A stretch of DNA of 51,171 nt from the NCBI GenBank assembly GCA_028826165.1, contig JAPDFW010000098.1, positions 1-51,171 on the forward strand, in the 5' to 3' direction. Under the pieces are notes generated by a model, which worked only from the letters and a program-made list of their open reading frames with translations, had not been told where the DNA came from and searched no databases. Below, one piece after another: positions 1 through 39,300 of the stretch (positions are counted from its first letter, which is position 1; the number at the start of each line of letters is the position of its first letter). This DNA is from Anaeramoeba ignava BMAN (lineage: Eukaryota; Protista; Anaeramoebae). Made by a program: the position numbers and the translations under genes.

Positions 1-2060
1 TGCAATTTCATCATCAACAAGATCCAATAAATTCTCTATATTCTTCTTTCTTGCTTCTTCTGATTCTTGCTTTGAACTCAAACTAAATAAGGTTGCCTTC
101 CTACTTCTTGGACTTGATCTTTGCAATCCTATTTTTTTTGGAGAATTCCCAAAATTCGTTTGATGTAATCCCTTTCTGGATAGGGAAAGTCTCCTTGAAA
201 AATTTTGGAAAAATCCAACGTTTTCCATTTTTCTCAAACTTGAAATCAAAATTTCAGAATTCAAAATGCTTTCTTGAATCCATTTCAATAATTCTTCAAT
301 TTCATGAATTTTTGATTCAATTTCGCGATTTTCGGGATTGATTGGCTCGTATATATTGAGTAAATAAATGGATATTTGAATCATTTGAATCCATTCCTGA
401 ATCACGAAAAGATTTGTTGAATAAAATTTAAAAACTAAACCCTTTGTTGTTGAGATTGTGAAAATATTCTTTTTGTCTTTTTGTTGTAATTTTTCAATTT
501 TTGTTGTTTTATCAAGTAGAATTGTTTGTTCTGGGTTTTTTTCCTTGTCGGAAGCATAAATATTTAAATAAAAATTGCTCAATATCAAATATTTCTTTTT
601 CCATCCTTGCGGACTTTCTTGCTGCTTTTCGTATTGATAATAAAGAATCCCATTTTTCTGTATCACAAACTCATTTGTCTTCGTTTCATAATTAAGAATT
701 GAGAGAGCTTTGTTGATTAAAAATCCTTCAGGTAAATCATTAGAAACAAAATTCCTTGTTTCTTTCCTCTCAAAAAATAAAGGTTCATCAACAATTTTTT
801 CATCTGATTTTTGTCCATTTTCTTGATTTGAATCAAAAGCTAATAGCGCTATTGATTCTTGTGTAAAATATCCATCAGATTTTTCTCCTTTGCCAATCCA
901 TTTTTCTTCTTGTTTGGCAAACAATATTCTTGCTGAATCATATTTCCTTAATTCTAAACCATTATGTGCTTCTGATTCTTGGTCTCTTATTGAAATTGCA
1001 TAAGATTCTCCATTGAATTTATTCTTTAATACTAAATAATATTTGAACAACCACAAATTCATCCACAAATCAATAACTTTGAGTCTGTCTCTCATTTTGC
1101 GATTTTCTTGGTCATTTTTTTTGCTTTTAATTTCAAGAATTCTTCGATAAACAATTTCCATTAGTTGAATCAATGATTTTAATGTTGGAATATCTTCAGT
1201 AGTTGATGAATAAGAACAAAATTTCAATATATCTTGACACAAATAAATTATATTTATCCAATCATCCATTTCTTTTTTACTATTTGCTTGAAAATGATAA
1301 TTCTTTTGGTTTTTAGTAATAATTCTAAATGCAAAATTTTCATCATTTTTATTATTTGATTTTGATTTTGATTTTTGATTTGAATTTGCTTTTGTTTTTG
1401 AATCTGAATTTTTCTCTGTTGTTTGAAAACTATCACGAATTACACACATAATTTTATCAATATAAATTGATTTCATTTCATTTTCATTTTCCTTTTCTGA
1501 AGGAAAATATCTTAAAGAAAGATCTTCCAAAACACAATATTTTTTCTTCCATTTTCCATTTGAAGAGCCAATCATTAACCAACCTTTTCTAGAAAAAGGA
1601 AATAATGGTAAACGAGTTGGTTTATAAAGTTTTATTAAAGGAACCGTTTGTTTTTTTAATAAAGCACTTTCCAGATAGCTTGTTTCTGGATTTAAATCAG
1701 TTAAAAAAATTTTCATAATTTCTTGATTAAAATTTTTTTGATATTTTAATTTAGGATCTAATTTAGGATCTATTGGATTTTGGAGTTTTACATAATTTAC
1801 TATTTTTATTCAAATTAATTTTAATTTTAATTTTTTAATTTAATTTTTAATTTTTTATTTTAATTTTAATTTTTCATTTAATTTTTACAAGGAAAAATCC
1901 CTTCAATATTATTTTTAATTAATTTTCCTTTAACCCATTTTTTATTAATTTGTTCGTTAATTATAATCTCATCATTTTCGTTAAAACAAAGTAAACTTAA
2001 ATCGTTAGATCGATAATTTAATCTTGCAATCGCTTTTTGATTTAATAAATTTGTTTCCAT
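1..2060 (-). CDS. SH3-PH-PH domain protein, 3' end beyond the window; exons 2060-1889 and 1799-<1
   Basis: Exon 1 is an SH3 domain (AIARLNY...KKWVKGKL..GIFP). Removing the GT-AG intron 1888-1800 completes the SH3 motif GIFPLNYV. Exon 2 is open to the window edge and has two PH-like domains (RKGWLMIG...WKKKYCVL...YHFQANSKKEMDDWINII; GILYYQ...WKKKYLIL...IQEWIQMI). The ORF track misses it because there is no stop inside the window. Confidence 0.85.
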
Positions 2061-2351
2061 TTTTAATTTCGGTTAAAAAAAAATAAAAAAAAAAAAAAAA
2101 ATAAAAATGAAAAAAAAAAATGAAAAAAAAAAAATGGCAAAAAGAAGAATACTCTTTTTATTTTAATTTATTTTAATTTATTTTTAAAAAAAATTGAAAG
2201 GAAAAATTTAATTTTCTCTCTTTTTTTTCTTCTTTTCTTTTCTTTTCTTTTCTTAATTTTAAAGTGAGAACAGAATTAGAAAAAAATAAAATTAATTTTT
2301 TCATTTTTTCATTTTTTCATTTTTTCATTTTTTTTAATTAATTATTTGGAA

Positions 2352-5300
2352 ATGAATAATTCTAAAATTTTTCCTTCAACTTCTCATCAACTTAGACTTT
2401 TTATTGATTATAAATTAAATCCAAATACTTCTAAATATAATCTTTCATGGATAATTGATATAAATGGAAAATTTAATTTAGAAAGTTTTCAAAAAAGTTG
2501 GATTTATTTAATTCAAAACCAAGAATCATTTAGAACAACTTTTAAAGAAGAAAATGATAAAATTTATCAAATTATTCATCCTAAAAATATAGAAATTCCA
2601 ATTGAAATTATTAATTTAAAGCAAAATAAAAACCCAAAAAAATCAATTAACAAAATTGTCAAATCAAAAATTTATAATCATTTTAATTTGGAAAACTTCC
2701 CTTTATGTTCTTGTTCTATTATTCAATTCAACCAAAATCAATTTAAAATTGTTTTTTGTTTTCATCATATTATCATTGATGGTTATTCAATAGATTTATT
2801 TTTCAATAATTTATCTCTTCTTTATTCTCATTTCAAATCAGATCCAAAATCTCAAAATATTGAATTAAATTTAGATTCTAAAAGAAATCTTTATTCTCAT
2901 TTCAAACCATATCCAAAATCCCAAAATATTGAATTAAATTTAGATTCTAAAAGAAATACAATGGAAGATTATCTAAAATTTGAAGAAAAACTTTTGCAAA
3001 ATTCCAGTAAAATTGAATCAGCAGAAAATTACTGGAAAGATGTTTTCAAGGATTCTTCTCTTGAATTAAAAATTCCAACATGCTATCATTACAACAAAGA
3101 CTCCTTTACAGAATCTGCAAAACGGATTTATTTTCATATCAACAAACAAGAAATGCTTTCAATAGAAAATTTTATTAAACAATACAAAACAACTTTATTC
3201 ATCTATTTAGTATCCGTTTTCCAAGTTTTACTCTTTAAATTTTCAAAACAAAAAACAATTACAATTGGTTATTCAAGTGGGATGTTTTATAGGAAAATTT
3301 TCCCTAATTTGATTGGATTTTTTGTTAATAATCTTCCTTTAAAATCAAAATTCAAAAAAGATTTGTCGTTTCTTCATCTTCTCTCTCAAAATCAAAACAT
3401 GAGAACTCAAACAAAAGAATTTGAATGGTTACCTTTATCAGAAATAATCAAACTACTTAGAAAGGATGAAAATTTTGTTCAAATTAACGCAACAAATTTA
3501 TTTCCTGTTTCTTTTTCAGCAACAAATTTTGCTATGAATGTAAAATTTGAAGATGTTGAAACCAAATCATATCCTGGAGAAATTGCAGAAATTATGAACA
3601 AACTTTCATTTATTTATGAAAAACAAAATGATTCCATTTGTTTTGGTGTGGAATATAACACTTCAATATTTTCTTTAGACTTTATCAATCAACTAATTAC
3701 TTATTACTGTAAATTGATTTCAAGCACTTCACAAAATCCAAATTTACTAGTTTCTGAATATTTATCAACATTTGATGATTCAATTCATCCAAATTTTGAT
3801 TATTCAACAAATTTATCTCAAAATCAATTTTTTATTTTTCAAAAATTTGAAGCTCAAGTCCAAAAACAACCTGATTCAATTGCTTTAATTTATCAAAATC
3901 AATCGATAACCTACAAAAACTTGAATAAAATATCAAATAAATTGGCTCATTTTTTAAGAGATTATTGCCAAGTAAAACCAAATACTTTTGTTGGGATTTG
4001 TCTTGATCGCTCATTTGAATTGATAATTGCAATTTTAAGTGTTTTAAAATCAGGAGCATGTTATGTTGCATTAGATCCTATATATCCCCAAGAAAGACTT
4101 AATTATTTTATCAAAGACACAAAAATTAATACAATTTTAACTTTTGAAAAATATTCCAATTTAATACCAAATTCAGTAAATTACATAATTTTTTTGGATA
4201 ATTTTTATAGAAATGGAAATGGAAATTTTTCTATTAAAATATCAGAAAATTCCCAAAAAAAGAAGAAAGTACAACTCTCTCACATCAGTAAAGATAATCC
4301 AAAAATATGTAATGAACTTAGTGATTTGGCTTATATTATTTACACCTCTGGATCAACTGGAGAACCAAAAGGAGTCATGATTTCACATTCAAATTTATCA
4401 TATAGAATTGACAGTTTACTTACAGCATATTGCATTAATCAAGACGAACAAGAAAGAGAGAAAGAAATATTTCTTCATCAAACATCACATAGTTTTGATA
4501 CTTCAATTGAAGAAATTTTCATTCCATTAACAACAGGAGGAGAAGTTGTGATTCTTCCCCAATCAAAATTTAGAGATATCAACTTAATTTTTGATTTAAT
4601 TTGGCAACATTCAATTACAACAGTAAGCTTTGTTCCATCTTTACTGGAAATTTTCCTGAAATATTTTTTGGAAAATAAAGATGCTTATAGATTAGCATTT
4701 CCTTTGAAAAGAATAATTTCTGGTGGAGAAGAATTGAAAAGAAATGTTGTGGATCTTTATTTTGATTTGAAACTAAATTCAATTAAATTATTCAATAGTT
4801 ATGGACCAACAGAAACAACAATTATTGTTACATCATATAAAATTGACTCAAAATTGGAAAGGAATGAAAAAATACTTATTGGGAAAACTATCCCTCACAC
4901 TTCCATTTATATTCTTGATTCAAAATTAAATCTTGTTCCTATTTTTGCTCCTGGTGAAATTTATATTTCAGGAAAATGTGTTTCTCAAGGTTATATCAAC
5001 AAAGAAGAGCTTACCAAAAAGAAATTCATTCCAAATCCTTTTTCGAAAGATGATTCAAATAAGATTTTATATCGAACAGGAGATCAAGGAAGATTTATGA
5101 AAAATGGAGGAATTGAATTTTTGGGAAGAGTTGATAATCAAATTAAATTAAGAGGAATTAGGATTGAATTGGTGGAAATTGAAAAAGTATTAAATAAACA
5201 TCCAAATATCGTTAATTCAGTTGTTTGTTTATCAAAAGAAAAACAAATTTTGGTTGCTTTTATTATTTATTCTCAAGATTCACAAAAAATAGAAAATCAA

Positions 5301-8300
5301 GAAATATTTTTGGAAAGGAAAAAAAACATTTTAAATTATTTGAAACCAAAATTACATCAAGCAATGATTCCTTCAATTATGATATTTCTTGATTCATTTC
5401 CTTTAACTGTTGGAAAGAAAATTGATAGAGGGAAATTAATGAAGATGGCTCAAGATCCAAAATATTTAAAATTTTCCAAAAATGAAGAATTAAATGATGA
5501 AAAAGAAGAATTCAAACCAAGAAATGAAATTGAAAAACAAATTGAAAACATTTGGAAAGATATTTTACACATTGATAATTGCAAAATTAATGATAACTTC
5601 TTTTCTTTGGGAGGACACTCTTTATCAGTTCTTCTATTTGCATCAAGAATTAGAAATATTTTCCAAATCAATTTACCAATAGATCTTATATTCCGATTCC
5701 CAACTATTATGGAAATTTCAGACTTGATTAAAAATTTTAAAAACCAAAATTTTGAAGATGAAATATTTATGATTGAAAAATTTCCAAATGTAGAATCACC
5801 TTATCCTTTATCATTTGCTCAAGAGAGATTACTTTTTCTTGAGGAATTATCACCAGGAAATTATAATATCTCAATACCAATAAAATTAAATGGTGAATTA
5901 GATATTGAAGCTTTAGAATATTCATTTACTAAATTGTTAAAATTATATCCCATTTTTGGATCCAGAATTTTGATGAAAAATGATAACTATTACCAAGAAT
6001 TTATTGAAAATAGAAATTTCCAAATTGAGAGAAGTGTAATTTCCTCAAAAGAAGTTGATCAAATTATTCGAAAAGAATCAAGCAAACATTTTGATTTATT
6101 CAACGATTTTCTATATAGAGTTAAATTATTTTGCATTATTGATAATGAAAATGAAAAACAAAATATAGATAATTGTGGAAGTTGTCATTATGGTCATAAC
6201 CATCTACTTTTAATTTGTGTTCATCATATTATTTTTGATGGATTTTCTCATGATATCATGAATAAGAAAATATCCTCATTTTATAATTATTATATTGAAA
6301 ACAAGGAGAAAAAAGGGATTGTATCTGAAGAAGAATTGAATGAAATAAATCATAACTTAAATTATATTGATTTTATTCTCTCTCAAAAAAATTGGTTCAA
6401 ATCAGAAAAAATGAACAAATATTTTGAATATTGGAAACAAAAATTAAGTGGATCTTCTTTCCATCTTAATTTACCATTTGATTTCCCAAGAAAAACAAAA
6501 CAAAGTTTCAAGGGTTCCTATTATGAATTTGGAATTGATCAAGTATTATTCAAAAAATTGAAAAATTTTGCAGAAAAAAATAACACAACAATGTTTGTAG
6601 TTATGCTATCAGTTTTCCAAATATTATTATATAGATATTCTAATCAAAATGATATTATTGTTGGAGTTCCATTTTCATCAAGACATTATTCAGGATCAGA
6701 AAATATTATTGGATTGTTTGTAAATTCAATTCCAATAATAACAAAATTTGATAAGCATACAAATCAGAGTTTCAATTCTTTTTTAAGAGAAATTCAAAAA
6801 ACACATGAAGAAGCGCATAAATATCAAGATTTACCTTTTGATAAAATTGTGAAACTACTAAATATTGCACATAATCCTTCACATAATCCCCTTTTCCAAG
6901 TTATGTTTTCATATGAACATTTAAAAGATGGAAGTGTATTTAATTTAAAAAATGTGAAATCCCAAGAAATTTACAATGTTGATTATCAAAGTTCCAAATT
7001 TGATTTATCATTAGAATGCCAAGAAATAAATCATGAATCTCAAAATAAAGAAGATATCACGTTCACTTTTGAATATTGTGTGGATTTATTCAGAAAAGAA
7101 ACAATTATACAAATGGCAAATAATTTGACAAATTTAATTGAATATATTGTGAAAAATGAAGGAAATGAATCAATATTTTTTATTCCATTACTTTCAGAAA
7201 AGGAAAAAGAAAAAATACTATATACTTTTAATTATAAAAAGCTAAACAAAGAAAAGAAAGAAAAAATATTTGCTGAAGATGAAAAACTCTTACATAAAAT
7301 TTTTGAAAAGATTACTAAAGAAAAACCCAAAAATATTGCATTGAATTATCTTGGGAAGGAAATTACTTATCAACAATTAAATGAAAATTCTAATCAATTT
7401 GCAGTTTATTTGATAAACAAATATAAAATTATCCCAAATTCTTTGATTGCTATTGGGATACAACGTTCAATACCACTTATAATAGCAATTATTGGAATTC
7501 TCAAAGCAGGTTGTTGTTTTTTACCTATTGATGTTAATTTACCACAAGAATCATTGATAAATATTATAAAGGATTCAGAGTGTAAATCAATTATTATCAA
7601 TGAAGAAACAAAATCCAAATTCTCATTTTTTGAAGGAAATTTTATCGATATTGATTCAAATGATATTTGGGAGCAAAAAGAAAATATTAATTATGAGGAA
7701 ATACTGCAAAAAATAGAAATAGATGGGAAAAGTTTAGCTTATGTTATTTATACATCTGGAACATCAGGAAAACCCAAAGGAGTTATGATCCAACACCAAG
7801 CAATAACTTTAAGATTATTATCTGCACAAAAACTTTGTCAACTTAATGAAAAAGATAAAATGCTTAATTACACAACAATCGGCTTTGATATTTCTATTGA
7901 AGAGATATTTTGGCCACTTATAGTTGGTGGAACTGTTGTTATTGGAGCAGAAAATATTCATTTTGATATTCCTCAACTTTTGGAAATTATCTCATCTACA
8001 AAAGTTTCTGTGATTGACTTTGTTCCTTCTTATCTTCAAGTATTTCTAGAGAATCACAACATTTTCAAAGATAAGTTGAAACCTTTAAGGATTGTAATTT
8101 GTGGAGGAGAAGCACTTAAATACGATATTATGAACAAGTTTTTCAAAATATTTCCTGAAAATGTTTCATTTTATAATGCTTATGGACCAACAGAAATTAC
8201 GATTGATGCAAGTTATTGGAAATGTGACAAGAATTCGGATCGAGTTTTTATTGGGAAACCTTTAGCAAAAACTTATTTATATATTTTAGATCAATTTTTA

Positions 8301-10394
8301 CAACCTGTTCCTATTGGTGTTTGGGGTAAATAATAATTAAATAATAATTAAAAATTTATCTAAAAATTTATTTAAAATTTAAAATCAAAAGGTCAATTAT
8401 TTGTTGGAGGAATTGGATTGTCTAAAGGATATCTAAATAATCCAGATTTAACAAAGAAGAAATTCATTGCAAATCCTTTTAGTAAAAATTCTGAGAAAAG
8501 ATTATATAAAACTGGAGATATTGTGCGATTTAATCATGAAGGAAATGTTGAATTTTTTGGAAGAAAAGATTCTCAAATAAAATTAAGAGGATATAGAATT
8601 GAAATATCAGGAATTGAATCAATTATTCAAGAGTTTCCATATGTTTCACAAGCAGCAATTAAAATGTTTTCTTTTAATGAAAATGATTATAATTCTTGCT
8701 ATTTAACTGCTTATATTGTTACCAAAAAACCAGAAATTTTGGAAAAAGAAAAATTGATTGAAGAATTGAAGAAATTTGTTTCAAATAAACTTCCTAAATA
8801 TATGATTCCAAGTTTTTATGTAATTTTGAATGAATTACCACTAAATCAAAATGGGAAGATTGAATACAATTTATTGGAAAAACCCAAAATTAATGAAAAG
8901 GAAATTGTGAAAATTGAACAAGAAATTTTGGGAGAAATGGAAAAGAAAATGATTTCAATTTGGCAAAAAATCTTGGGAATTGAGGAAATATCTTTTGATA
9001 GTAATTTTTTTGAACTTGGAGGGAATTCATTGATCTTATTAAGTTTACAATCAAAAATTGATATGGAAATGAAAGAGAAAATACCAATTAACCAATTCTT
9101 TATCAATCAAACACCAAGAAAATTGGTTGAATACATTAATTCTATTCATAATATTCAAAATTTAGAAAGTGAAATTATTACCAATAAAGAAAATAATGAA
9201 AATTTTGGAGATTCAACAATAAAAAAGTTAATTTCTGAAGATTTAAAATTTGAATTGGAGAAAATTGATTTGAAATTTGATTTGGAAAAATTGAAGAATC
9301 CAGATGGTATTTTCTTAACAGGAGCAACAGGATTTCTTGGCTCATTTTTATTATTTGATTTATTAAAACAATTTGAACAACAAAAAACACCAATTTATTG
9401 TTTAGTTAGAGCAAATGAGAATGAAAATGGAAAACAAAAAATTGAAAGAATAATGAAAGAAAATTTGATTTGGAAAGAAGAATTTAAAGAAAGAATTATA
9501 GCAATAGAAGGAGATTTATCCAAAACAAATCTTGGAATGGAAGAAAATGAATTCAACGAATTATCCAAAAAAGTATCATTAATATATCATTGTGGAGCAA
9601 TTGTCAATTTTATTTATCCTTATGAAAAAGTGAGGAATACAAATATCCTTTCAACAAAAGAAATCATCAAGTTATCGTGTTTGAATCAATTAAAAACAAT
9701 CAATTATATATCAACAATTTCTGTTTTAGAATTTTATGAGGAAGATTATGAAGAAATTGATGAAACATTTCCATTGTATATTCACAATAATCTTTATTCA
9801 AGTGATGGTTATACACAAACAAAAACCGTTTCTGAATTGCTGATTTTGAAAGCAAAGGAAAAGGGGATTCCAATTAAAATTTACAGACCATCAAGAATTA
9901 TGGGAGATTCTTTAAATAATTGTTATAACGAAAAAGATTTCCTTGTTAATTTTATAAAGGGAGTTTATCATATGAAAATTACTCCTGATATAGATTTATT
10001 AGAAGATTGTTTACCTGTTGATTATGTTTCTCAATCAATTGTTTCTTTATCTATTCAACCTGATTTATTTGGTCAAGTTTTCCATTTATTTAATTCTCAA
10101 AAAATTTCTTGGAATGAAATTATCTCAATTATGAATTCAAATTCTCTTCAAGTTTCTACTCTTTCTTATAAGGAATGGAGGAAATGTTTTGTTAATTCAA
10201 AAGATGATGATTTAAATCCACTTTCTAATTTTTGGTTTTTATTTGATGAAAATGGAGATTTTTTTAAGAATAGAAGAGAGAATTTTAAATATTTAAATAA
10301 GAAAACCAATTTAAAAATTGAATATTTAATTAATTCTTTAAAAGATCTAAAAGAATTATTTACTTTTTATTTAAATTCGATGAAATTAAATTAA
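2352..10394 (+). CDS. Bimodular nonribosomal peptide synthetase C-A-T-C-A-T-R (terminal thioester reductase); exons 2352-8325 and 8392-10394, 2658 aa
   Basis: C1 HHIIIDG (2763). A1 YTSGSTGEPKG (4341), FDTS, SGGE, NSYGPTETT, YRTGD, QIKLRGIRIE. T1 FFSLGGHSL (Ser at 5619). C2 HHIIFDG (6222). A2 YTSGTSGKPKG (7749), CGGE, NAYGPTE, YKTGD, NGK. T2 FFELGGNSL (Ser at 9027). R domain TGATGFLG (9318), YISTIS, YTQTK (YxxxK), RPSRI. The ATG is at 2352 (the ORF track uses TTG 2346). Splicing 8326-8391 joins the two ORFs in frame (7977 nt total). Confidence 0.97.
2820..2957 (+). repeat. 69-bp (23-aa) in-frame tandem duplication inside the NRPS C1 domain
   Basis: LYSHFKSDPKSQNIELNLDSKRN / LYSHFKPYPKSQNIELNLDSKRN; copies at 2820-2888 and 2889-2957, nearly identical in DNA. 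Confidence 0.95.
8326..8391 (+). other. 66-nt phase-1 spliceosomal intron in the NRPS A2 domain
   Basis: TGGG|gtaaataat...aaaatcaaaag|GTCAA. It contains in-frame stops, and its removal restores the A6 core motif PIGVW-G-QLFVGGIGLSKGY. Confidence 0.95.
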
Positions 10395-10583
10395 TTTAGA
10401 AATTAAAATTAAAATTAAAATTAAAATTAAAATATTTTTCCAACATTTTTTTCTCAATTTTGTTTAAATTTACGTCAAGTTTTTTTTTGTCAAATTTTTT
10501 TTCCTTTTTTTAATTTTTTTTTTTTAATTTTTTTTTTTCATTTTTTTTTTTCATTTTTTTCTTTTCATTTTTTTTTTTTCATT

Positions 10584-18929: not shown

Positions 18930-21900
18930 TCATTTATTTCAAAATATTCTTTATTCCTTATTTTAAATTAAATTAATTAAATATTATTATTCAATTTTTA
19001 TTCCAATTTTTATAAAATATTATTAATAATTTTATAAATTAATTATTATTTATTCAAATTTTTAATCAAAATATTAAATTGATTAAATTTAAAAATAAAT
19101 AAAAAATTTCTTATTTTTTTATTAAATTAATTTATTATTATTAAATATTTATTAAATTTTAATAAAATATTATTAATAATTTTATAAATTAATTATTATT
19201 TATTCCATTTTTAATCAAAATATTAAATAGATTAAATTTATTAAATATAAATAAATATTCTTTATTCCTTATTTTAAATTAAATTAATTAAATATTATTA
19301 TTAAATATTTATCTAAATTTTAATAAAATATTATTAATAATTTTATAAATTAATTATTATTTATTTCAAATTTTTAATCAAAATATTAAATTGATTAAAT
19401 TTATTAAATATAAATAAATATTCTTTATTCCTTATTTTAAATTAAATTAATTAAATATTATTATTCAATTTTTATCTTAATTTTAATAAAATATTATTAA
19501 TAATTTTATAAATTAATTATTATTTATTTCAATTTTTAATCAAAATATTAAATTGATTAAATTTATTAAATATAAATAAATATTCTTTTATTCTTTATTT
19601 TAAATTAATTTTAATTAAATATTATTAATAAATATTTATCTTAATTTTTATAAAATATTATTAATAATTTTATAAATTAATTATTATTTATTTCAATTTT
19701 TAATCAAAATATTAAATTGATTAAATTTATTAAATTTAAATAAATAATATTCTTTATTTCTTTTTTAAATTAAATTTATTAATAAATATTTATTAAATTT
19801 TAATAAAATATTATTAATAATTTTATAAATTAATTATTATTTATTTCAATTTTTAATCAAAATATTAAATTAGATTAAATTTTTAAATATAAATTAATTA
19901 TTCTTTATTTCCTTATTTTAAATTAATTTTTAAATAAATATTTATTATTAAATATTTATTCCAATTTTAATAAAATTTATTAAAATTAAATAAATTAATT
20001 ATTATTTATTCCATTTTTAATCAAAATATTAAATTGATTAAATTTATTAAATTTAAATAAATATTCTTTATTTCTTATTTTAAATTAAATTAATTAAATA
20101 TTATTATTAAATATTTATTCCAATTTTAATAAAATATTAATTTTATAAATTAATTATTATTTATTCAAATTTTTAATCAAAATATTAAATTGATTAAATT
20201 TATTAAATATAAATAAATATTCTTTTATTTCTTATTTTAAATTAATTTAATTAAATATTATTATTAAATATTTATTCCAATTTTAATAAAATATTATTAA
20301 TAATTTTATAAATTAATTATTATTTATTTCAAATTTTTAATCAAAATATTAAATTGATTAAATTTATTAAATATAAATAAATATTCTTTATTTCTTATTT
20401 TAAATTAATTTAATTAAATATTATTATTCAATTTTTATCTAAATTTTAATAAAATATTATTAATAATTTTATAAATTAATTATTATTTATTTCAAATTTT
20501 TAATCAAAATATTAAATTGATTAAATTTATTAAATAAATAAATATTCTTTATTTCTTATTTTTATATTAAATTAATAAATTAAATATTATTATTAAATAT
20601 TTATTCCAATTTTAATAAAATATTATTAATAATTTTATAAATTAATTATTATTTATTTCAAATTTTTAATCAAAATATTAAATAGATTAAATTTATTAAA
20701 TATAAATGTCAATTTTTATTCTTATTTTAAATTGAATTAATTAAATATTATTAATAAATATTTATCTAAATTTTAATAAAATATTATTAATAATTTTATA
20801 AATTAATTATTATTTATTTCAAATTTTTAATCAAAATATTAAATAGATTAAATTTATTAAATATAAATAATTATTCTTTATTCCTTATTTTAAATTAAAT
20901 TAATTAAATATTATTAATAAATATTTATCTAAATTTTAATAAAATATTATTAATAATTTTATAAATTAATTATTATTTATCCCAATTTTTAATCAAAATA
21001 TTAAATTGATTAAATTTATTAAATATAAATAAATATTCTTTATTTCTTATTTTAAATTAATTTAATTAAATATTATTAATAAATATTTATCTTAATTTTA
21101 ATAAAATATTATTAATAATTTTATAAATTAATTATTATTTATTTCAAATTTTTAATCAAAATATTAAATAGATTAAATTTATTAAATATAAATAAATATT
21201 CTTTATTTCTTATTTTAAATTAATTTAATTAAATATTATTATTAAATATTTATCTAAATTTTAATAAAATATTATTAATAATTTTATAAATTAATTATTA
21301 TTTATTTCAATTTTTAATCAAAATATTAAATTGATTAAATTTATTAAATTTAAATAAATATTCTTTTATTCCTTATTTTTAAATTAATTTAATTAAATAT
21401 TATTATTAAATATTTATCTTAATTTTTAATAAAATATTATTAAAGTTTTATAAATTAATTATTATTTATTTCAATTTTTAATCAAAATATTAAATTGATT
21501 AAATTTATTAAATATAAATAAATATTCTTTATTTCTTATTTTAAATTAAATTAATTAAATATTATTATTAAATATTTATCTCAATTTTAATAAAATATTA
21601 TTAATAATTTTATAAATTAATTATTATTTATTTCATTTTTAATCAAAATATTAAATAGATTAAATTTATTAAATATAAATAAATATTCTTTATTTCTTAT
21701 TTTAAATTAATTTAATTAAATATTATTATTAAATTTTTATCTTAATTTTAATAAAAATATTATTAATAATTTTATAAATTAATTATTATTTATTTCAATT
21801 TTTTAATCAAAATATTAAATTGATTAAATTTATTAAATTTAAATAAATATTCTTTATTTCTTATTTTAAATTAATTTAATTAAATATTATTATTAAATAT

Positions 21901-22100
21901 TTATCTCAATTTTTATAAAATATTATTAATAATTTTATAAATTAATTATTATTTATTCAAATTTTTAATCAAAATATTAAATTGATTAAATTTATTAAAT
22001 ATAAATAAATATTCTTTATTCTTTTATTTTAAATTAAATTAATTAAATGTTATTATTAAATATTTATCTTAATTTTAATAAAATATTATTAAAGTTTTAT
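18930..22100. repeat. Tandem satellite array, ~162-bp unit, ~19-20 copies, extremely AT-rich
   Basis: Anchor AATCAAAATATTAAA recurs at about 19064, 19213, 19376, 19538, 19702, 19855, 20019, 20175, 20339, 20502, 20668, 20829, 20991, 21154, 21316, 21480, 21641, 21805, 21967. Confidence 0.93.
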
Positions 22101-22104
22101 TCAT

Positions 22105-24288
22105 TTATTCTTTATTATTTTTGTTTTGTTCTTTTAAACTTCTTCCAACTTTCTCCCAAAATATTTTCTCAAAATTCATCAAAGGACTTTCAAAACAAAG
22201 CGAAAGAAGAAAACCTGCAGCAAAACCAAGAACAGAAAATCCACAAAAATAAACAGCAATAATAGAATCTGACCAGTAAAAAGAGGCTTTAAAATCAGCT
22301 TCGATTGTGCGCATAATAATTGGATGAATCAAGTAAGTAGCATAAGTTGCACGAGAAAAAGGAACCCAAAAATCTGAGGATAAAAAGACCAAAATAGATC
22401 CACCATACCCAGCAAGAAACAAATAAAGAAGAATAAGCAAACCCAATGAAAAAGCAAATCGGGAAAATGTTATGAACCAAATGTTCTCACTTTTGTTCCA
22501 ACCATTAAGATCGTCGGAATGATAAAGGGAATAAGTGCCAAAAGTTGTGATTGTCATCAAAAAACCTGCGAATAGAAACAAGGAGATTCTCAATTTTTTT
22601 CGCACTTTCCTTGATGAATTTTCTGGTCTTTCATAGAGAACAAATCCCAGAATCATCCCAAGAAGAAAAGGCGTAATCCTGCACCAGGGCTTGACATAGA
22701 CTTTATTCCAATAATCAGAGCTATTTGGAGCAGCAACAGATTGAGAAATGTTATAACCAGAAACAACACTTGCAGTTATGATAAAAGAAAGGATCATCAA
22801 CGAAAAAACGGAAAAATAACCGAATTTGCGGTTTCGATAAAACAGGAAAATAATTGCTGGAGAAAGTAGATAAAATTGGAAGTCCAGTGAAAGATACCAC
22901 AAATGACCAAAACAACTGTTCTCCCATTTTGGATAGAAATCAGTAATCAAAAAAGCATTTGCCCACCAGCTTTTGGAACAAGGTTTATTCACCGACTCCT
23001 GATAGAGTTTCCACATTGGACCATTTCCGAGTTGGATTGCGAATTTCCAACCGATCCAAATCACGATCAAAAATAACGGTGCAATTCTCCAATAACGATG
23101 AAAATAGAATTTCACTAAAGACACTTTGCCGTTGGTTGATTTCAACTGGGCCAAGAGGCTATGCACCGCAAGCATCCCGCTCAATACGAAGAAAAGATCG
23201 ACTCCAAACTCAGCCCCAACAACAAACTGGAAGGAAAACCTTTTCAGAAGCGATTCTGCTCCCAAAATGTTACCCACAGCAGCTGTCGCAATGAAATAGG
23301 AGTATGTGTGTCCCAAAATGATCCACAACATGCTCAAAACACGAAGAGAATGAAGAACCTTAAATGAATTATGGGATTCTGTGGCGATTCTTGGAATGTT
23401 TTTCAAAAGTGAAAATTGAAGGAAAAATTCCACTTTCCAATTGTTTTTTGCTGTTCCACTTTTTTTCTTTTTCTCTTGATTTCCCTGTTTACTTTGTGTT
23501 AGTCCGTTATGTTGGTTTTCCTCTTCAGAACTCTGAATCTCTTGCTGTATATTTGGTTCAAAAGGATTTGTCTCTTCGTTATCTATCAAATTCCTCATCG
23601 GCAATGAAGAGTCCAATTGCATAAATTCTGCAGAAGTTTTCTCTTGCGTCTCCATTTCCTCGTTTTTTGCAAGTACATCGTTATCTTTTAGGCTTTGTTT
23701 TTCTGGATCGTTTGATTTTTCAACTTTTTCTGAGTTTGGCTTCAAATTTTTTGGATGCTTGTTTGAATTAGGGTTTTCTTGTTCTTCTCTCTTAAGAATT
23801 CTGCTATGAAGAAATGTGCCGATCACAACAGTCATCCCAACAAACACAAAAAACAAGACAATCAATAAAAACGAGATTGATTTTCGATACTCAATTGAGC
23901 AACTGACAGAAATTGGATAATTTTCTGGAATGGGAAGAAAACTTCGAATTTTAGGCACAAAATAATTCAACTCACTCTCAGTGCAGTTAAATGGTAAACA
24001 TGCACCAAGTGACACATCCACGTCTCGGAATTTTGTTTTGAGTACACAATATCGGGTTAGCTTCACTATTTGATTTTTATTGATTTCTAAACAAGATTCA
24101 TATTTTCCAAGGTCGTTTATATTTGTTCCCCATGTTTTCAGAATTTCATCCCATTTTGGATAAGTGTGGGTTATATATAATGATTGAAGATCATTGATGC
24201 ATTGAGATGTATTTTGTGTTTTTGTCATTTTAAAATGAAAAAGTAGTAAAAATATGAATAAAAAGAATTTAGGGAATTTTAAAATCAT
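22105..24288 (-). CDS. NRF-6/OACYL-like membrane O-acyltransferase (N-terminal NRF domain + acyltransferase-3), 727 aa, intronless
   Basis: Signal peptide and Cys-rich NRF-like segment (NDLGKYESC...YC...LGACLPFNC). Acyl_transf_3 motifs LRVLSMLWIILGHTY, GVDLFFVLSG, FYFHRYWRIAP, CFGHLWYLSLDFQFYLLSP, YVKPWCR, SRATYATYLIHP, FESP. Confidence 0.92.
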   Translation of the reverse strand: MILKFPKFFLFIFLLLFHFKMTKTQNTSQCINDLQSLYITHTYPKWDEILKTWGTNINDLGKYESCLEINKNQIVKLTRYCVLKTKFRDVDVSLGACLPFNCTESELNYFVPKIRSFLPIPENYPISVSCSIEYRKSISFLLIVLFFVFVGMTVVIGTFLHSRILKREEQENPNSNKHPKNLKPNSEKVEKSNDPEKQSLKDNDVLAKNEEMETQEKTSAEFMQLDSSLPMRNLIDNEETNPFEPNIQQEIQSSEEENQHNGLTQSKQGNQEKKKKSGTAKNNWKVEFFLQFSLLKNIPRIATESHNSFKVLHSLRVLSMLWIILGHTYSYFIATAAVGNILGAESLLKRFSFQFVVGAEFGVDLFFVLSGMLAVHSLLAQLKSTNGKVSLVKFYFHRYWRIAPLFLIVIWIGWKFAIQLGNGPMWKLYQESVNKPCSKSWWANAFLITDFYPKWENSCFGHLWYLSLDFQFYLLSPAIIFLFYRNRKFGYFSVFSLMILSFIITASVVSGYNISQSVAAPNSSDYWNKVYVKPWCRITPFLLGMILGFVLYERPENSSRKVRKKLRISLFLFAGFLMTITTFGTYSLYHSDDLNGWNKSENIWFITFSRFAFSLGLLILLYLFLAGYGGSILVFLSSDFWVPFSRATYATYLIHPIIMRTIEADFKASFYWSDSIIAVYFCGFSVLGFAAGFLLSLCFESPLMNFEKIFWEKVGRSLKEQNKNNKE

Positions 24289-30304: not shown

Positions 30305-33300
30305 TTAAAATTGAAATCCACAACAAATAACATCGCCATTTCCATTTGCACCAAAAATCCATCTTTCATTAGGTGAAAGAGCAACAGAACGAATTGCAGT
30401 TTTCATATCAGCAGAAAACAATATTTTAAGAGAATATAATTCACGAATTTGGAGCATACCACTTTTGCCACCAAGAACAAAAAAAGGATGATTTTTAGCA
30501 AATGCCCAAGAATAAACAATTTGGGGACAAGAAGAACTGACAAGATGTTTTCCATTAAGAGAGAATAAATGAATAGTTAGGTCTTCAAAAGTATAAACAA
30601 CAAGATATCCCTGAGTGCAAATTTTAACAAGAGTTATATATTGTGATTGTGATGTTTTTGTTGTTGTTGTTGTTGATAAATAAATTGTTCTTATATGCTT
30701 TCCTTTGCGAAGACTATAAACCACAACAGATCCATCTGATAATCCACCAACAATAAGATCCAAATCAATATTCACATCGAGACAAACAACTTCGGAATCA
30801 TGAGAAGAAAGAATGCAATTTGGTGTTTCATTCACTTTTCCCTGAATATAATCAAATTCCCAAACAATTATCGTTGTGTCAAGTGATCCTGTTACAAGAA
30901 TATTTTTTTCAACTGCTGTGCAAGTTACTATGTTTTTGTGCATGTGGATTGTGTCAGTCAGTTTGGAACTTTCAAGATGGAAAATTTTTAAACTATCATC
31001 CCAATATCCACAGCTTATGAAAAATTTTGAATTGCTTGAAAGTTTGAAACAATTAGAGATATTTTTGATTTCTTTCGAAAATGATACTCCAATTTGTGGT
31101 GAATTTTTTGATGTATCTATATCTAAACTGATAATTCTATTTTGATCTAAATTTTCTTTTTCTAATTGATTTTGATATTGATTTTGATTTTGATTTTGAT
31201 TTTGATTTTGGTTTTTATTTTGATTTTGATTTTGATTTTGATTTTGATTTTGATTTTGATTTTGATTTTGATTTTGATTTTGTTTTTCATTTTGATTTTG
31301 TTTTTCATTTTGATTTTGTTTTTCATTTTGATTTTCATTTTGTTTTTCATTTTGATTTAATTTTTGATCAATGCTTTGATTCCGAGATATAATAAATCGA
31401 TGCTCCATTAATTTCCTTGATTCATCAAAAACCCAAATACGACCATTCAAATTTGTTGTAACAAAATTTGGAGAAAATTCAGAAAACCCCAAAAAAACAA
31501 GACTGTTATCTGAAACATGGAAAGTAAAATATTTAAAAGATTCACGAATTTTTGAAGGATTCCAAAAGGAAAGCTCTTTCTGAATTTGAGTTTGAGGAAG
31601 TCTTTTTGGATGAGGTTTCCTGAAAAGTTTGATTGGGGTTTGTCCATAATATTCAATTTGGGATTGAACAGAAGAAATATCTGAAGGATCAACTTTGGAA
31701 AGATCGACACAATTTTCGTATGAAATATAGTGGAAAACATTATATGATTTGATAGCTTCTTCACCTGTTTGTTTGTAACCGAAAATCAAGTCAATCCATT
31801 CTGAAAGATGAAGAGAAACATATTCTGATTCAAGTGCCTCGCGATGAATGCGGACAAATTCCTGAGAAGAATGAGCCCAGGGAGGAAGTAACACATCACC
31901 AACTTCTTCGTTGTTTTGTTTTTTTCCAAGATTTATTTTGTTGCAATTTTCAAACATTTCGGGAAGATAAAAAAACTCAGGAATCAATTCCTTCACATCC
32001 GCATTATTGCGCATAAGATCTTCCCATGTATTTGGAATTGAAGAGAACATTCTATCGGGTTTATCGAATTTTCCTCCTTGAAATTTTATTGCGAGAGAAG
32101 TGAACGGATATACTCTGACCATGTAATTCAATACAATTCCTGGATTTGAATAATGCGTTCCGTGATGAAAAGCTGGTGTTCCTTTTGGAAAAGAATTATA
32201 ACGTTCGTTAAGCATGGGAAGGATATTCTTGCTTAGCGCACCGATTGGCTTTGATAAATCACGATAAATATTTGGATCGTTGAGATCAATTTCTGGGGAA
32301 TTGTAATCACATAAAATCCACGGGAAAACTGGATATTGAGAAAGATCGTTGTATGTTCGACCAGAAAGTGTGTTCAAACACATTAAATACTCGAAATTCG
32401 AAATTTTCCTTCTTTTCCATTTGCGGGTGAGTCTTGTTTTCTTAAGAAATGATCTTGGACTCGTGACAAAATTTGCAGGTGTGCTTGGAAGACCAAGTGA
32501 TTTATGTGTTGTGATTTGAGCAAAAATTTTATCTCTCAAATCAGCTTCGAAAGTCAGAAAAAAGTTCTTTTTTGTATTCAGAAAAATCTCAATTGCGCAA
32601 TGGCTGTAGATATATCTGCGCTTGTGGAGCCCGATAATCGAGCTCACAGACCAATTATAATCCTTATTATGGATATCTTCTTTCCGATACAGATTTGGAT
32701 TTTCCTCGATTCTCTTCTCGTCAACATAAAAACTGATGTGAGAATTCGTCACTTCGAATATTCCTGGTGTTCTTGATAACGGAAGAATCAGATGGCATGT
32801 GTATCTTGCTGTTGTTGGGATCGAAATGGTTTTTCTACGAAGGAAAATATCCTTGAGTTTAATTGATCCAAAATGAGATGGTTTATTTTCGTGGGAAATG
32901 GAGTTTCTTTTGGATTCGCTGAAATCATTAAAATCATTTAAATCATTCAAATCATTCATGTGCATTTCGGAATAATCCATATTATCAGCAATCTCTTGAT
33001 CATCGATATCTTCGTTTCCATCATCGCTATCAATCTCACTAATTGTACTTGAATCGCCAAATACCTCGTTCAAATCCTTAATGTTGCGATTCTGTGCATT
33101 TTTATCATCGATTTGCGAAATTTGCAAATTAAGTTCATCAATTTTGCGTTCTGCATTATTAGTCAGAGAAGAATCCTGGTGAACAGAGGAATCAGGATAT
33201 TGAGAGAAGTTATATTCAATCTTCATTCTGCGGCGACAACGCAGATGATCCTCTATCTTGTCCAGTTTCCAATGTTGGCCGCTTTGGTTTTGAGTTTTGA

Positions 33301-36300
33301 TTTTATGATGCGTGACTATTTTCTTTGTTAGTCGATGGTAATTAAGTTGCGCGAAACGAGCCTTTTTCTGGTCACCTTCGCGCTTATTTGCTCTTCTCCG
33401 AGTCTCAATGCTCATCATTGTGTTCACGTTTTTGTCGATTTCAATGCGGAATTTTTCCGAAAGTAATAAATCCTCTTTTGTATTTTCTGAAACTCTTATT
33501 TTGGTTAATTGCGTGTTTTTAAATAAAACTTGACTAAATAATTCTTGATTTTGTGATATTTCTAAATCTATTTTAGACTCGATGATTGAGAATTTTGTTT
33601 GGAAGATGTCTTTCCATTTTGAGTCAAAAAGAGAGCGAATAAATTGGGAGATATTTCTGTGTTCGATAAAGGATTCCTTTGATTTTTTGCGTGGAACCAA
33701 ATCGGAATTCTCATGGGAATCGCACAGAGTTTCAAATAAGAAGGAATAACCATCTCTCATAAGAATTTGGAAAATTGTTGCGATTTGCAAAATTTTTGGG
33801 TTTTTTTCTAAATCCTGTTCAGTATTATTTTCCTGGTGTAAATCACGTTGATATGATTCAAGTATTCTGAAAAGATAGCATAAAGTCAACATCATGGGTT
33901 CAGGATTTTTTGATAATGATCGTGATGTTATTTTTAATGGTCCTTGGAAGAGTCTTGCGAGAAACATCAAATTTTTCTCGTTTTCTAATCCTTCAAATGA
34001 ATCAATCGAGTCGAGAATCGATAACAAAACCATTTTGTATATTGCTCGTGTGCTTGTTTTGTCGTGTAATTTGATTCCTTTTTTGTCGAAAAACGAACAG
34101 GAATCAAGTAGAGAATAAAGAAGCATCAGAGCCTTATTTGTTATTTTTCTCATGTTTACCATCTGGTTCGTTTCTTCAGATATAATATTGGTTGTGTCTT
34201 TCAGAAAAGAAGGGATCATTGGTTGAGATGTGCTAATTGGTATTGGGCGAAAGTGTGATGGTATAACTGTGGGATTTTCTGTATCGCCTCTTTTTTTCTT
34301 TGTTGATGAAAATGCTGAGTTTTCTTGGAAATCTTTTTGCTTTTTAGGTTTGGAAAATACAGTTGAAACTGTTCGGATCAGAATTTTTGGTTTTCCTGCT
34401 TTCTGTTGTTGCTGTTGTTGTTCTAATGAGCATTGATTTTTTTCGCAATCTTTTTGATCTTTTTGATCTTTTTGATCTTTTTTATTTTTATTTTTCTTGT
34501 TTTTGTTTTTGTTTTTATCCTTCGTATCTTTTTTCGGTTTTTTTGTATTTTCATTAAATTGGGAATTTGTGTATTGATTTTCGTTTTGAATAAGGATATT
34601 TGGAGTATTTTGAAGTGGAGATAAGAAGTGATAATAACAAACCATATTGATTAAATGATACAAATTTTCAACAACAATAGAAAGATCATTAGAACGTTTC
34701 AATTCAGATTGGATATTTGTAGGATCTTCATCATGGAATCGTTTCTCAAACAATGTTGTTGTTGCAGAAATGATTTCTGAAAGAATTCTCAAGACGATTC
34801 TTTGTGCGTTTTGTTGGGAAAGAAAACTGAGATTGATTAAAGCTGCTGTTTCTTCAAATAACGATCCAAAACTTTCTTTATTGAACATGCAATATAAAAG
34901 AATATCTGAAAGAATTGCAAACGCAACATTATTTATTTGGAATTGAGAACCGTGTGATTTTGAAATTTGAGGAATTGTGCCGAAATCAACGGGTATTGAA
35001 CTATCGATGATTTGCAATAAAAGTCGTTGCCACATGAATTCAATCAAAAGAAGCTCTTTATTGACAACATTTTCTGTGATCAAGAAACGCACATTGCGAA
35101 GAACTTCAAGAGAATATTCATTTGGATGCTCGGAAATGATGGATGTTATTGTGCGTAAAATGAAGCAATTTTGGATCGTTCTTCCTCCGATTGTCGGATC
35201 GTTTTGCTGTGTTTCGTTGCAAGTTAATAAAGAGAATAATGTTGGAAGAACTTCGGTATATGAAGTTTCCACAAGAATCATGTGCAAAACATTGTATTCA
35301 CAAGAAGAGCAAATACGAGTTCTCGAAATGATCTTTTTCTTCTTTCCTTGAGAAGCGACATGTGCACTTTCAAGAAGAAACAGTAAACGCAAGCAAAGAT
35401 TAATATGAGCTGCTTCGTTATTTTTCTCCATCAAATAAATCAAAGTGTCCATGATATTCAAGTAATTCAGATGGAATTGCTGTTCTGTTGGGATGGATGT
35501 GAATATTTGAAATAAAACAAGCAATAATTCATTATTAAGTGCTAAATCGTTTGATAAGCAGCAAGTAATAGATAGAAATATGATTTCCTTGTTGAACATT
35601 TCTGTGTCACAAGCCGCTTTTTTTATACAAAGTACAATTGTTGACAATAATTTTTGAGCAAGTTGATGTTTTTGCTCATTGGGTAAATTTGCCATATTTT
35701 GCAATTTTTGCCATGATTTATTTCCCATTTGCTCTGGATATCTTGGTGTTGGTGGTTCTGGTGTTTTGGTGGGTGTCCATGCACGTATTTCCTTTGGAGC
35801 ACTTCCGCTCCAGTAGTATCTCCTTAAAACATCAACCAAACTTTCTGTTGTGATATCTTTGAAACGATCATTTGGATTTTCTCTATTTGATTTTTCTGCA
35901 AGTTCATGGATTATTTGCAAAACTTGTTCCTGTATTCCTTGTTCTGTTCTAATCCAAATATCGAAATCAAGCATTATTCCTGCTATTAAATCTGCAATAA
36001 AATCTGATGATTCTGTTGCTTCATCAAATATTAGTCTTCGAAGATGATCCAGAACTCCTGATGTAATGAATATATGAGGAATACGTTTGAGAACTGATGA
36101 CAAAGTACATAATGAATGTTCTGTATGGAAATCCTGTTTATTAAGAGGGTTTCCAAGAAGTATTTCTGTAAGAAGAGCGAATATTTTTTCGAATATTAAT
36201 GGGTTTTTACGAGTTTGAATTTGAATTTGATTTTCATTTTGAATTTGATTTAAATTTTCATTTTGATTTTCATTTTGTTCTGAAGATATAAGTAACATCA

Positions 36301-39300
36301 TCTCAAGTAACATTTTAGTTCCTCCAAAACAACTAATCAAATGTAAAATATTCGATACAGAGCATTGTGAAATTGAAACTAACTTTGCAGAACCTGAAAT
36401 GGCCTGCTTCTTGGGACTTTGATCAAAACAAACAGAGCCATTAGAAGCCTTTGAGTTGAGACAAATCATAAGATGGGAAGTCAAAGAACCATCAAGAACA
36501 TTGCGAATCAAGGAATGATAACTAGATTGATTCTTTTTAAGAATTTGCTCCATTTCATTGGATTCAAAAAAAGAATTATATTCTGCTCCAAGATGGTAGA
36601 TCCCAGATATCCATTCAGGCTCCAAAGAATCATCGAAAAAATAAAGAGTTCCCATTTGTCCGTAGAAAAGATAATTAAAGGATTTCTGAGGAGACTTGGG
36701 CGAAGTATGTTTAAATCCAATACTACATTTTGTAAATGATTCGTTGATACTTGGAAATTTAAGTGTTTTGTTTGCAATAGAAACACCATCAATGAAAATC
36801 TCTGCAGGTCCATTTGAAGACCATCGCTGGTTTGAGTGTGTAACTGCAACGCAATACCATCTCTTCATTTCAAACGTGAAATTTGCTGATAATTTATCCC
36901 AATGCTTTGATGTATATACTGAATAATATAGTGTGTGTTTTTCTTGGTTTTCTGCTTTTTGTTGATTTTCCGACAAATAAAATTGCATTCCATAATCGGA
37001 TGAAGTAAAGAAACTAAATATATTTGGGAGATTTTGTTTGTTCTGTGTTGGTGATTTGAAAGACTCAATTCGAATCCAAGTTAAAAATGTAAATCCTTTT
37101 GTGGCTCGCCATTTTTCCTGCATTGAAAATTCGATGCGAGAATTTCTTCCATTAAAATCAAAAAAATATAACGGTCCATTCTGTGTTTTTGTCTTTTGAA
37201 TTGTCGAACGCACTCCATCAATAAGAAGCTCAGTTATTTTGTGCGCCTTATTTTGTAAAATGAACATATTGACCATTTGGAAAATTTTTTTCATTTCAGA
37301 AACAGAGAAACGATGCGATCCGATGACTAAAACAAGTCGGATCATTTTCTCGGCTAATTGTTCATTTTCATTTTCAATTTCAATGAAATCCACAATTTGA
37401 GAAATTAGTTTCAAAAGATATCCAACAAGTCCTAAATCTCCACAACTAGATGTGTTGTGAAGAGATTTCTCGCAAATTTGACAAAATATATCCAATAAAT
37501 TTGAAAGTTTTTCGTTTTGCTGTTTTTTGATATCTTGTTGGTTTTCTATTTTTGTGTTGGAATTTTTTTGCTTGTTTTCCACCAAAGAATTTCTTAATCC
37601 TGCAGTGTATACGCGAAAAATTATCAAAATCATATCGGGGTTTTGAATAGTAAAGTTATTTTGGATGTCAAACTCTCCATTATTGACAAGCATGTTAAAC
37701 AACACTTCGAAAATTTTTTGATCAGGATTTTCTCCAACAGCGTCGCACAAAAGTTCACCAAATGTGGAATATCCAATCGATTTCTTGAAGAAATCCAAGC
37801 TTGAAGTGCTATTTCGGAACAATGCGGCAAGCAATTCGAGGATTATATACTCGTTCCCTTGGTTTGATTGATGAGAGAAAAGAAGGGTCATTGCTGTTGA
37901 GAAAATATTAGCCAAAACAAATTGAGGTTGCAGAACATCAGGTATGAAGTTGATCACCTCGATTGCCACTGCCACAAGTTCTTTGATCATTTTGTCTACG
38001 TTTGTTGATACTTCGACACTGTTGTTTTTCGACATTTGGTTGAGAAGAAGCATTTCCTCCACAATTCTTGATATCAAAAAGTTTTGCTGATTATTCTCTT
38101 GTTTTTCTGTTCGTTTGAGAATCGCTTTTAAATGAGGGAGAATAAGACTGCGAGTTTGTGGTTCGCGAGCCAAAATTATTAATAAGTTCATAAATGATGT
38201 CTCTTTGAAAACAAAGAGTTGTGTTTCATTGACACTTAAAAATAAGTGCAATAATTTAAGCATTGAGTGAGTTAATTTGTGCAATATTTGCATTTTTTCT
38301 GGGTAATGTATTATTGTTGTCGAATAAAGATCCATTAAAAATGGAAGTAAAATGTTGAATATTTTGAACCCAAGATTGTCTATAAATTTCACAACCGTTG
38401 ATTGCATATCTGATTTGAAAATTTTAATATAAACTTTAGTACAGAAAAAAAGAAGGAATAAATTATCTCGGTTTTGAGTTAATTGATTGAATAAAAATTG
38501 ATATTCGAAATTATCCTGATTTTTAAGAATGATATTTGAGAAGAAATCTCTTGATTTGTTGAATAAATAATGGAAAAGTGTTTGGAGAAATTGAGGAAGA
38601 TTTTTCTAAAAAAAGGGAAAAAAAAATGAAAAAAAAAAGATATTCAAATTAATATTAAAATTGATATAGAAATTAATATACATTAATCGGTCTGTGAATA
38701 AAGAAATCTGTGAAAATGGTTTTCCATTTGTTTTCTTGTCTTAAAAAATTCAGTGTGTTATTATCCATATTTTTCTCCAATAAAAACATCACATAAAATT
38801 GCAATTCGGGAATAACGTTTTTGATGAAATGTCTAGCTTTTTGATTTTCTTTTGAATTATTAAAATCATCTTCAAATAGATTCATACAAACATGAATAAT
38901 TTTTCTTTTGTAAATGAAATATAAATTGTTTTCATTTTGATTTTCATTTTGATTTTGATTTTGATTCTGATTTTGATTTTCGTTTTCATTCTCATTTATA
39001 TCTCCATTCTTTTTTTTCTTTCTGAATTTTGAGAACATTTTCTTTTTAGGATTTTCGTTATTCTTGTTATTTTTTTGTTTATCTTTTGAGCCTGATTTTG
39101 TTCGCGTACTTTTCTTTTTTCTTGTAGTTTGGAATTGATGTTTCAATTTTTCATCAACATCAATAAATTCTCTAAGTAGTTTAAATAATTGGTCTAAATA
39201 AGGATTGCTAAATGAAATGTTATCCTTTTTTTCTTTTTGTTCTTTTGGATCAAAAGTATGGAAAGAAAAAGTTGGGAAAGAATCATTTCCAATAAGTTTA

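What the first reader, a model, noticed from the sequence alone, without database searches (positions are those of the whole stretch)
2352..10394. Complete bacterial-type reductive-release NRPS (C-A-T-C-A-T-R) resident in a protist genome
Seen: every catalytic motif of two full modules and a terminal SDR-type thioester reductase is intact in one 2658-aa frame, flanked by intron-containing eukaryotic genes (SH3-PH-PH, CAF1). Known: multimodular NRPSs are mainly bacterial and fungal. C-A-T-C-A-T-R is the architecture of gut-anaerobe peptide-aldehyde synthetases such as ruminopeptin RupA, and R domains release aldehydes or alcohols. Inferred: a laterally acquired, functional secondary-metabolite synthetase in a non-fungal, probably anaerobic, microbial eukaryote, where such chemistry is to my knowledge barely described.
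Basis: partly seen in the sequence, partly recalled or inferred. Interest (0 to 1): 0.95.

Follow-up and report, generated by a model that had tools for sequence, protein, structure and literature searches.

The report
Amoeba's duplicated reductive peptide synthetase
An anaerobic amoeba carries a bacterial-type peptide assembly-line gene that has gained an intron, probably makes a small lysine-arginine aldehyde or alcohol, and exists in two near-identical copies whose differences fall preferentially in the substrate pockets; a genome paper already listed the locus but never characterised it.

Summary
Real, with one correction: the 2658-aa C-A-T-C-A-T-R protein needs splicing of a 66-nt GT-AG intron (8326-8391). 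The genome is Anaeramoeba ignava BMAN. The model equals NCBI M0811_11149, and the locus is antiSMASH 'Region 55.1 NRPS' in the 2024 genome paper, which already suggests a role in symbiont selection. Its existence is therefore known; its anatomy was not described. All catalytic motifs are present. Named relatives are bacterial (28-42% identity; no donor resolved). One Sfp-type PPTase exists, and all 11 carrier domains found in the genome belong to NRPS-type genes. The pockets predict Lys then Arg, and the R domain is MxaA-like. C1 looks elongation-type, not starter-type, so this is not shown to be a RupA orthologue. New here: a 98.6%-identical paralogue differs at 5 of 16 pocket residues (P about 2e-5), including a charge reversal, which suggests product diversification; that copy is frameshifted in the assembly. 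Six degenerate NRPS-PH fusions also exist. The scan had already noted the paralogue and these fusions on other contigs.

The parts
2352..8325 (+). NRPS exon 1 (aa 1-1991: C1, A1, T1, C2, most of A2)
8326..8391 (+). 66-nt GT-AG spliceosomal intron with an in-frame stop, inside A2; same position in the C47 paralogue
8392..10394 (+). NRPS exon 2 (A2 subdomain, T2, R, stop)
2358..3770 (+). C1 condensation domain, HHxxxDG intact, elongation (LCL)-like, no upstream donor module
2820..2957 (+). 69-nt (23-aa) tandem duplication inside C1, present in both copies
3834..5456 (+). A1 adenylation domain, pocket code DTESIGSII(K), Lys-like
   Evidence: reference code
5538..5729 (+). T1 carrier domain (Ser kept)
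5796..7220 (+). C2 condensation domain, LCL-type
7284..8867 (+). A2 adenylation domain (split by the intron), pocket code DIEDIGAID(K), Arg-like
   Evidence: reference code
8949..9137 (+). T2 carrier domain (Ser kept)
9309..10300 (+). Terminal thioester reductase (R, SDR fold), MxaA-like
1..10432 (.). Segment duplicated on contig C47 (12096-1726): 5' part of the PH-domain gene plus the whole NRPS
1..1800 (-). Upstream eukaryotic multi-PH-domain gene (5' part; runs off the contig start)
10584..13046 (+). Downstream intron-containing CAF1 deadenylase gene

Best explanation
A nuclear, intron-bearing, two-module NRPS of Anaeramoeba ignava, derived from an old lateral transfer from bacteria and probably still active. 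Shown: intact domains and motifs, eukaryotic context, one Sfp-type PPTase, a recent duplicate. Inferred: the host PPTase primes T1 and T2; A1 loads lysine and A2 arginine (or another basic residue); C2 joins them; the NAD(P)H-dependent R domain releases Lys-argininal, or the alcohol after a second reduction. C1 either caps the N-terminus with an acyl group or is idle. The likely role is a trypsin-type or dibasic-site protease inhibitor, or a cationic metabolite acting on bacteria (prey, competitors, symbiosome colonisers). After duplication the second copy changed pocket residues, so it would make, or made, a different dipeptide.
For: Motifs intact over 2658 aa. Intron, GC3 0.15 and spliced neighbours; the eukaryotic upstream flank is shared by two separately assembled contigs. 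All named best hits are bacterial at 28-42%. The R domain sits on a long branch among bacterial R domains; closest solved R is MxaA, E 1e-65, versus fungal PsoA 1e-16. The A1 code matches BacB Lys DAESIGSV at 6/8; the A2 code matches ApnA Arg DVEDIGAIEK at 8/10; A1 and A2 group with Lys-coded bacterial A domains after SR4 recoding (84/92). An NRPS-R from Nostoc CENA543, a strain that makes argininal trypsin inhibitors, is among the R-domain hits. One AASDHPPT/Sfp-type PPTase, and all 11 carrier domains found lie in NRPS-type genes. 5 of 16 pocket residues differ between paralogues against 63 of 2658 overall, P=2e-5.
Against: pN/pS 0.43 between copies is not significant once transition bias is allowed (P 0.07-0.19). 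Pocket codes are predictions for domains only about 40% identical to any reference. No MbtH-like helper, no tailoring or transporter gene nearby. The C47 copy is frameshifted in the assembly. The trees lack eukaryotic reference NRPSs and show composition bias.
Confidence: 0.6

Rival explanations
1. C1 is idle, so the enzyme works like AusA: the free Lys-Arg aldehyde cyclises to a dihydropyrazinone, pyrazinone or piperazine, and the product is not a protease inhibitor. This differs from the main reading only in the last step.
For: C1 is more diverged than C2, carries a 23-aa duplication, and resembles elongation rather than starter domains. No donor module exists except degenerate PH fusions. 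Uncapped dipeptide aldehydes cyclise non-enzymatically (PMC12327764).
Against: The C1 HHxxxDG is intact in both copies. The AusA model scores 1038 bits against a cut-off of 2500.
Confidence: 0.3
2. The gene is intact but silent or in early decay, like the six degenerate NRPS-PH fusions, and the pocket differences reflect gene conversion or mis-polishing rather than selection.
For: No expression evidence. Frameshift in the C47 copy. Purifying selection between copies not significant.
Against: About 8 kb of 75% AT sequence stays open with every catalytic residue kept despite long branches from bacteria. Random decay or sequencing error would not concentrate on pocket residues, and no third copy exists to convert from.
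Confidence: 0.12
3. The gene belongs to an older, vertically inherited eukaryotic NRPS-R family that is poorly sampled, rather than to a transfer into the Anaeramoeba lineage.
For: Only 28-42% identity to bacteria, no donor resolved. A. flamelloides also has NRPS regions of similar span. My trees held no eukaryotic references.
Against: No named eukaryotic protein other than A. ignava among the best 120 hits of either word-based search. The Lys2-type model is below cut-off (663 vs 1030).
Confidence: 0.1
4. Bacterial contamination or a chimeric contig.
For: The culture holds many bacteria, and no read-level check of the junctions was possible.
Against: Spliceosomal intron, 25% GC like the host, the same eukaryotic upstream flank on two contigs, CAF1 189 nt downstream, no bacterial near-match.
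Confidence: 0.02

Closest known systems
A. ignava BMAN antiSMASH Region 55.1 / M0811_11149 (PMC11550330, Suppl. Data 7)
   Same: The same locus: region end 30,394 = gene end 10,394 + 20 kb; six other regions match the other loci to the base. The paper suggests NRPS products may influence symbiosome colonisation.
   Different: The paper gives only coordinates and type: no domain order, intron, substrates, origin or paralogue comparison. NCBI calls the protein hypothetical.
RupA (ruminopeptin) and related gut-bacterial dipeptide-aldehyde NRPSs
   Same: Stand-alone two-module line with reductive release (architecture from memory; dipeptide-aldehyde product per PMC12327764).
   Different: C1 is not starter-like by PDB comparison; pockets predict basic residues; no gut-Firmicute protein of this architecture among the best hits. 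The RupA sequence and paper could not be obtained.
Spumigin/pseudospumigin SpuB-type lines and unnamed bacterial C-A-T-C-A(Lys-like)-T-R genes (P0290, P0304, P0364)
   Same: Terminal basic-residue module plus an MxaA-type R domain. P0290 and P0304 lie beside a trypsin-FHA gene. Argininal products inhibit trypsin.
   Different: In bacteria these are the last gene of a longer PKS/NRPS line that feeds C1; here no upstream line exists. Identity is only 28-30% and the trees show no supported grouping.
MxaA R domain, MxcG, AusA
   Same: Same reductive-release chemistry; MxaA R is the closest solved structure.
   Different: All whole-protein models are far below cut-off; module number or N-terminus differ.
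Horizontally acquired NRPS/PKS of bdelloid rotifers and Folsomia candida (PMC11258130)
   Same: Bacterial-type NRPS domesticated and duplicated in a non-fungal eukaryote.
   Different: Animals, with pathogen-induced expression shown in rotifers; here an anaerobic metamonad, with reductive release and untested expression.

Membership tests
Multimodular (type I) NRPS | C-A-T modules with HHxxxDG, A core motifs and carrier serines | tested here: met
   TIGR01733 727 bits vs cut-off 317 on the 96%-identical paralogue
Multimodular (type I) NRPS | A PPTase able to prime the carriers | tested here: inconclusive
   Single Sfp/AASDHPPT-type gene present; activity on these T domains not testable
Multimodular (type I) NRPS | Expressed and makes a peptide | not testable with these tools
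Thioester-reductase (R) release | Rossmann GxxGxxG and Thr/Tyr/Lys catalytic set; TIGR01746 | tested here: met
   268 bits vs cut-off 213
Thioester-reductase (R) release | Two-electron (aldehyde) versus four-electron (alcohol) product | not testable with these tools
   Closest solved R is MxaA (alcohol-forming, from memory); an NRPS-R of an argininal producer is also a hit
RupA-type acyl-dipeptide-aldehyde synthetases | Stand-alone C-A-T-C-A-T-R order | tested here: met
RupA-type acyl-dipeptide-aldehyde synthetases | Starter-type N-terminal C domain | tested here: not met
   C1 vs TycC C domain E 3e-22, vs EntF 5e-6 and 7C1K/7C1H (starter-type, from memory) 2e-5 to 4e-5; outside the E/DCL clade. 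No starter references were in the tree, so the test is by score only
RupA-type acyl-dipeptide-aldehyde synthetases | Orthology to RupA | tested here: inconclusive
   Not among best hits; RupA sequence not obtained
AusA / MxcG / Lys2 equivalogs | NCBIfam score above curated cut-off | tested here: not met
   1038/2500, 793/2300, 663/1030
Laterally acquired nuclear gene | Host-type intron, composition and flanks | tested here: met
Laterally acquired nuclear gene | Supported nesting within a bacterial clade with eukaryotic homologues sampled | tested here: inconclusive
   Long unresolved branches; no eukaryotic references in the trees

The most novel reading that the evidence does not exclude
An anaerobic protist runs its own peptide-aldehyde pathway: one module duplicated into two after transfer, the gene then duplicated again, and selection retuned the substrate pockets (Lys-Arg in one copy, an acidic or amide residue at position 1 in the other), giving host-made small molecules that help decide which bacteria colonise the symbiosome.
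Probability: 0.25. Interest if true: 0.8.

Novelty: new member of a known kind. Interest (0 to 1): 0.55.

Why it matters
I found no report of a characterised NRPS product from a metamonad. The genome paper left open whether host NRPS products shape the Anaeramoeba-Desulfobacteraceae symbiosome. This analysis turns that remark into a concrete target (acyl- or free Lys-argininal/argininol, or its cyclised form) that can be synthesised, searched for by LC-MS and assayed. Two paralogues that are 97.6% identical in protein but differ at five pocket residues are also a natural experiment on how A-domain specificity changes.

Tried and rejected
The RupA and Guo 2017 papers are not held. A single-sequence scan of genome contigs found nothing; the alignment-based scan worked. 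The 1.84-billion-protein search was swamped by long multimodular proteins and gave no names. I first read pN/pS 0.43 as purifying selection, then dropped it as proof after correcting for transition bias. My class profiles for C-domain subtypes were contaminated by mislabelled domains and are not used. The allele reading of the two copies is unlikely: each downstream neighbour is single-copy and the upstream gene copies are only 94% identical. No A. flamelloides orthologue was recovered, which does not show absence.

Full report
Observation. The stated interval is not one ORF: the first frame stops at 8333 and a second ends at 10394. Of the possible GT-AG pairs, removing 8326-8391 (66 nt) gives exactly 2658 aa and restores the A6 region of the second A domain. 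This model is identical to NCBI KAJ5070120.1, M0811_11149 of Anaeramoeba ignava. Pfam gives C, A, T, C, A, T, R. Both HHxxxDG motifs, both A3 and A8 motifs, both carrier serines, the Rossmann motif and the R-domain Thr/Tyr/Lys are present; only A10 of A1 deviates (GKKID, lysine kept).

Residency. The CDS has GC 0.25 and GC3 0.15, within the range of its neighbours. A spliced CAF1 gene starts 189 nt after the stop, and a multi-PH gene lies upstream. The intron and the upstream junction recur on a second contig. Public runs, most of them guessed to be DNA, hold 49-76% of the sampled words. Contamination is very unlikely. I sent no letters of that stretch to search tools afterwards, searched the model exon by exon or through tool-supplied protein ids, and left the joined-sequence search out.

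Prior knowledge. The genome paper (PMC11550330) says the Anaeramoeba genomes have 'several non-ribosomal peptide synthases' whose products might influence symbiosome colonisation. Its Supplementary Data 7 lists BMAN Region 55.1 NRPS 1-30,394, which is this gene's end plus 20 kb; six further regions match the other loci to the base. It gives no architecture or analysis, and the gene ids are not in the held supplements. Horizontally acquired NRPSs are also known in bdelloid rotifers and a springtail (PMC11258130).

Origin. Apart from the paralogue, all named best hits are bacterial at 28-42% identity. The R domain lies on a long, unresolved branch among bacterial R domains; MxaA R is the closest solved structure. 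A1 and A2 are sisters and group with Lys-coded bacterial A domains, also after SR4 recoding (84/92) and when each is placed alone; C1 and C2 also group (85). This fits an old transfer, possibly followed by module duplication, but supports are modest, composition is biased, and no eukaryotic references were in the trees. No donor can be named.

Mechanism. Pocket codes are DTESIGSII(K) for A1 and DIEDIGAID(K) for A2. Published codes are DAESIGSV for BacB Lys (PMC3207962) and DVEDIGAIEK for ApnA A1 Arg (PMC5311044). The inferred product is Lys-Arg released as an aldehyde or alcohol. Peptide aldehydes made by NRPS-R enzymes inhibit serine and cysteine proteases (PMC10548850), and argininal peptides inhibit trypsin (PMC5640712). 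Bacterial proteins of the same order with a Lys-like last pocket end longer NRPS or PKS/NRPS lines, and two of them lie beside a trypsin-FHA gene. C1 keeps its active site but scores much better against elongation than starter C domains, and no donor line exists here, so N-acylation is uncertain. The genome has one AASDHPPT/Sfp-type PPTase. All 11 carrier domains found belong to the two NRPS copies, six NRPS-PH fusions and one carboxylic-acid-reductase-like gene, so NRPS-type proteins are the only detected clients of that PPTase. No MbtH-like gene was found.

The paralogue. Window 1-10432 is duplicated on contig C47. Each downstream neighbour is single-copy, so these are paralogues, possibly in tandem across an assembly gap. 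The CDS copies are 98.6% identical, with 62-63 amino-acid and 34 silent differences. Five differences hit the 16 variable pocket positions: E720K, S759N and S816G in A1, I1847V and D1889E in A2 (P 2e-5, against the whole protein or within the A cores only). C47 A1 reads DTKNIGGII, with Lys at position 239 as in the surfactin Glu code DAKDLGVV, although the overall match is weak. Changes also cluster near the R active site (aa 2395-2463; not tested statistically). This suggests selection on product identity. Caveats: overall pN/pS is not significant after allowing for transition bias, and the C47 copy has two 1-nt insertions in A2 that break its frame in the assembly, which may be polishing errors or a real loss.

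In passing. Six other loci are A-T-C-C-PH fusions whose A and C motifs are lost; four keep the carrier serine. One has a complete transcriptome ORF in EukProt. I found no paper joining these domains. Other first readers flagged them, and they deserve their own follow-up.

Verdict. A real, probably functional NRPS of a known kind, already listed but uncharacterised. The substrate prediction and the pocket-focused divergence of the duplicate are the additions. Interest 0.55.

Noticed in passing
G000 C59:497844-504508, C68:187453-194490, C8:64212-70850, C101:201424-208319, C114:77053-84152, C115:399717-406988 (L031-L042): Six degenerate NRPS modules (A-T-C/E-C) fused to a C-terminal PH domain. 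A and C catalytic motifs are lost; the carrier Ser is kept in C59, C68, C101 and C114 but lost in C8 and C115. The C68 gene has a complete EukProt transcript ORF (P0510). No paper found; possibly more novel than the finding itself.
   Followed up: partly
L029 (G000:C47:1764-9809, minus strand): Paralogue M0811_14704 with five pocket changes and two 1-nt insertions near 4311; the NCBI model lacks 29 aa there, including the A4 motif of A2.
   Followed up: yes
L044:3033-6557 (G000:C97), minus strand: ZZ-zinc-finger-A-T-R protein, carboxylic-acid-reductase-like; probably the paper's 'NRPS-like' Region 53.1.
   Followed up: partly
L043:3147-3947 (G000:C113): The only PPTase found (AASDHPPT/Sfp type); no stand-alone ACP, FAS or type I PKS carrier domain was detected in the genome.
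   Followed up: partly
L046:17659-19449 and L047:17614-19401: Bacterial PKS/NRPS clusters ending in a Lys-like module plus R domain lie next to a trypsin-FHA gene, a possible target or self-resistance gene.
   Followed up: no
window 19001-22000: About 3 kb at 4-5% GC with strong GC skew, between genes.
   Followed up: no
window 22105-24288 (minus): Acyltransferase-3 family gene 12 kb from the NRPS; no evidence that it belongs to the pathway.
   Followed up: no
window 30305-38407 and 41456-48952 (minus): Intron-free 2700-aa BEACH/neurobeachin gene and a run of ankyrin-repeat ORFs; ordinary eukaryotic content.
   Followed up: no
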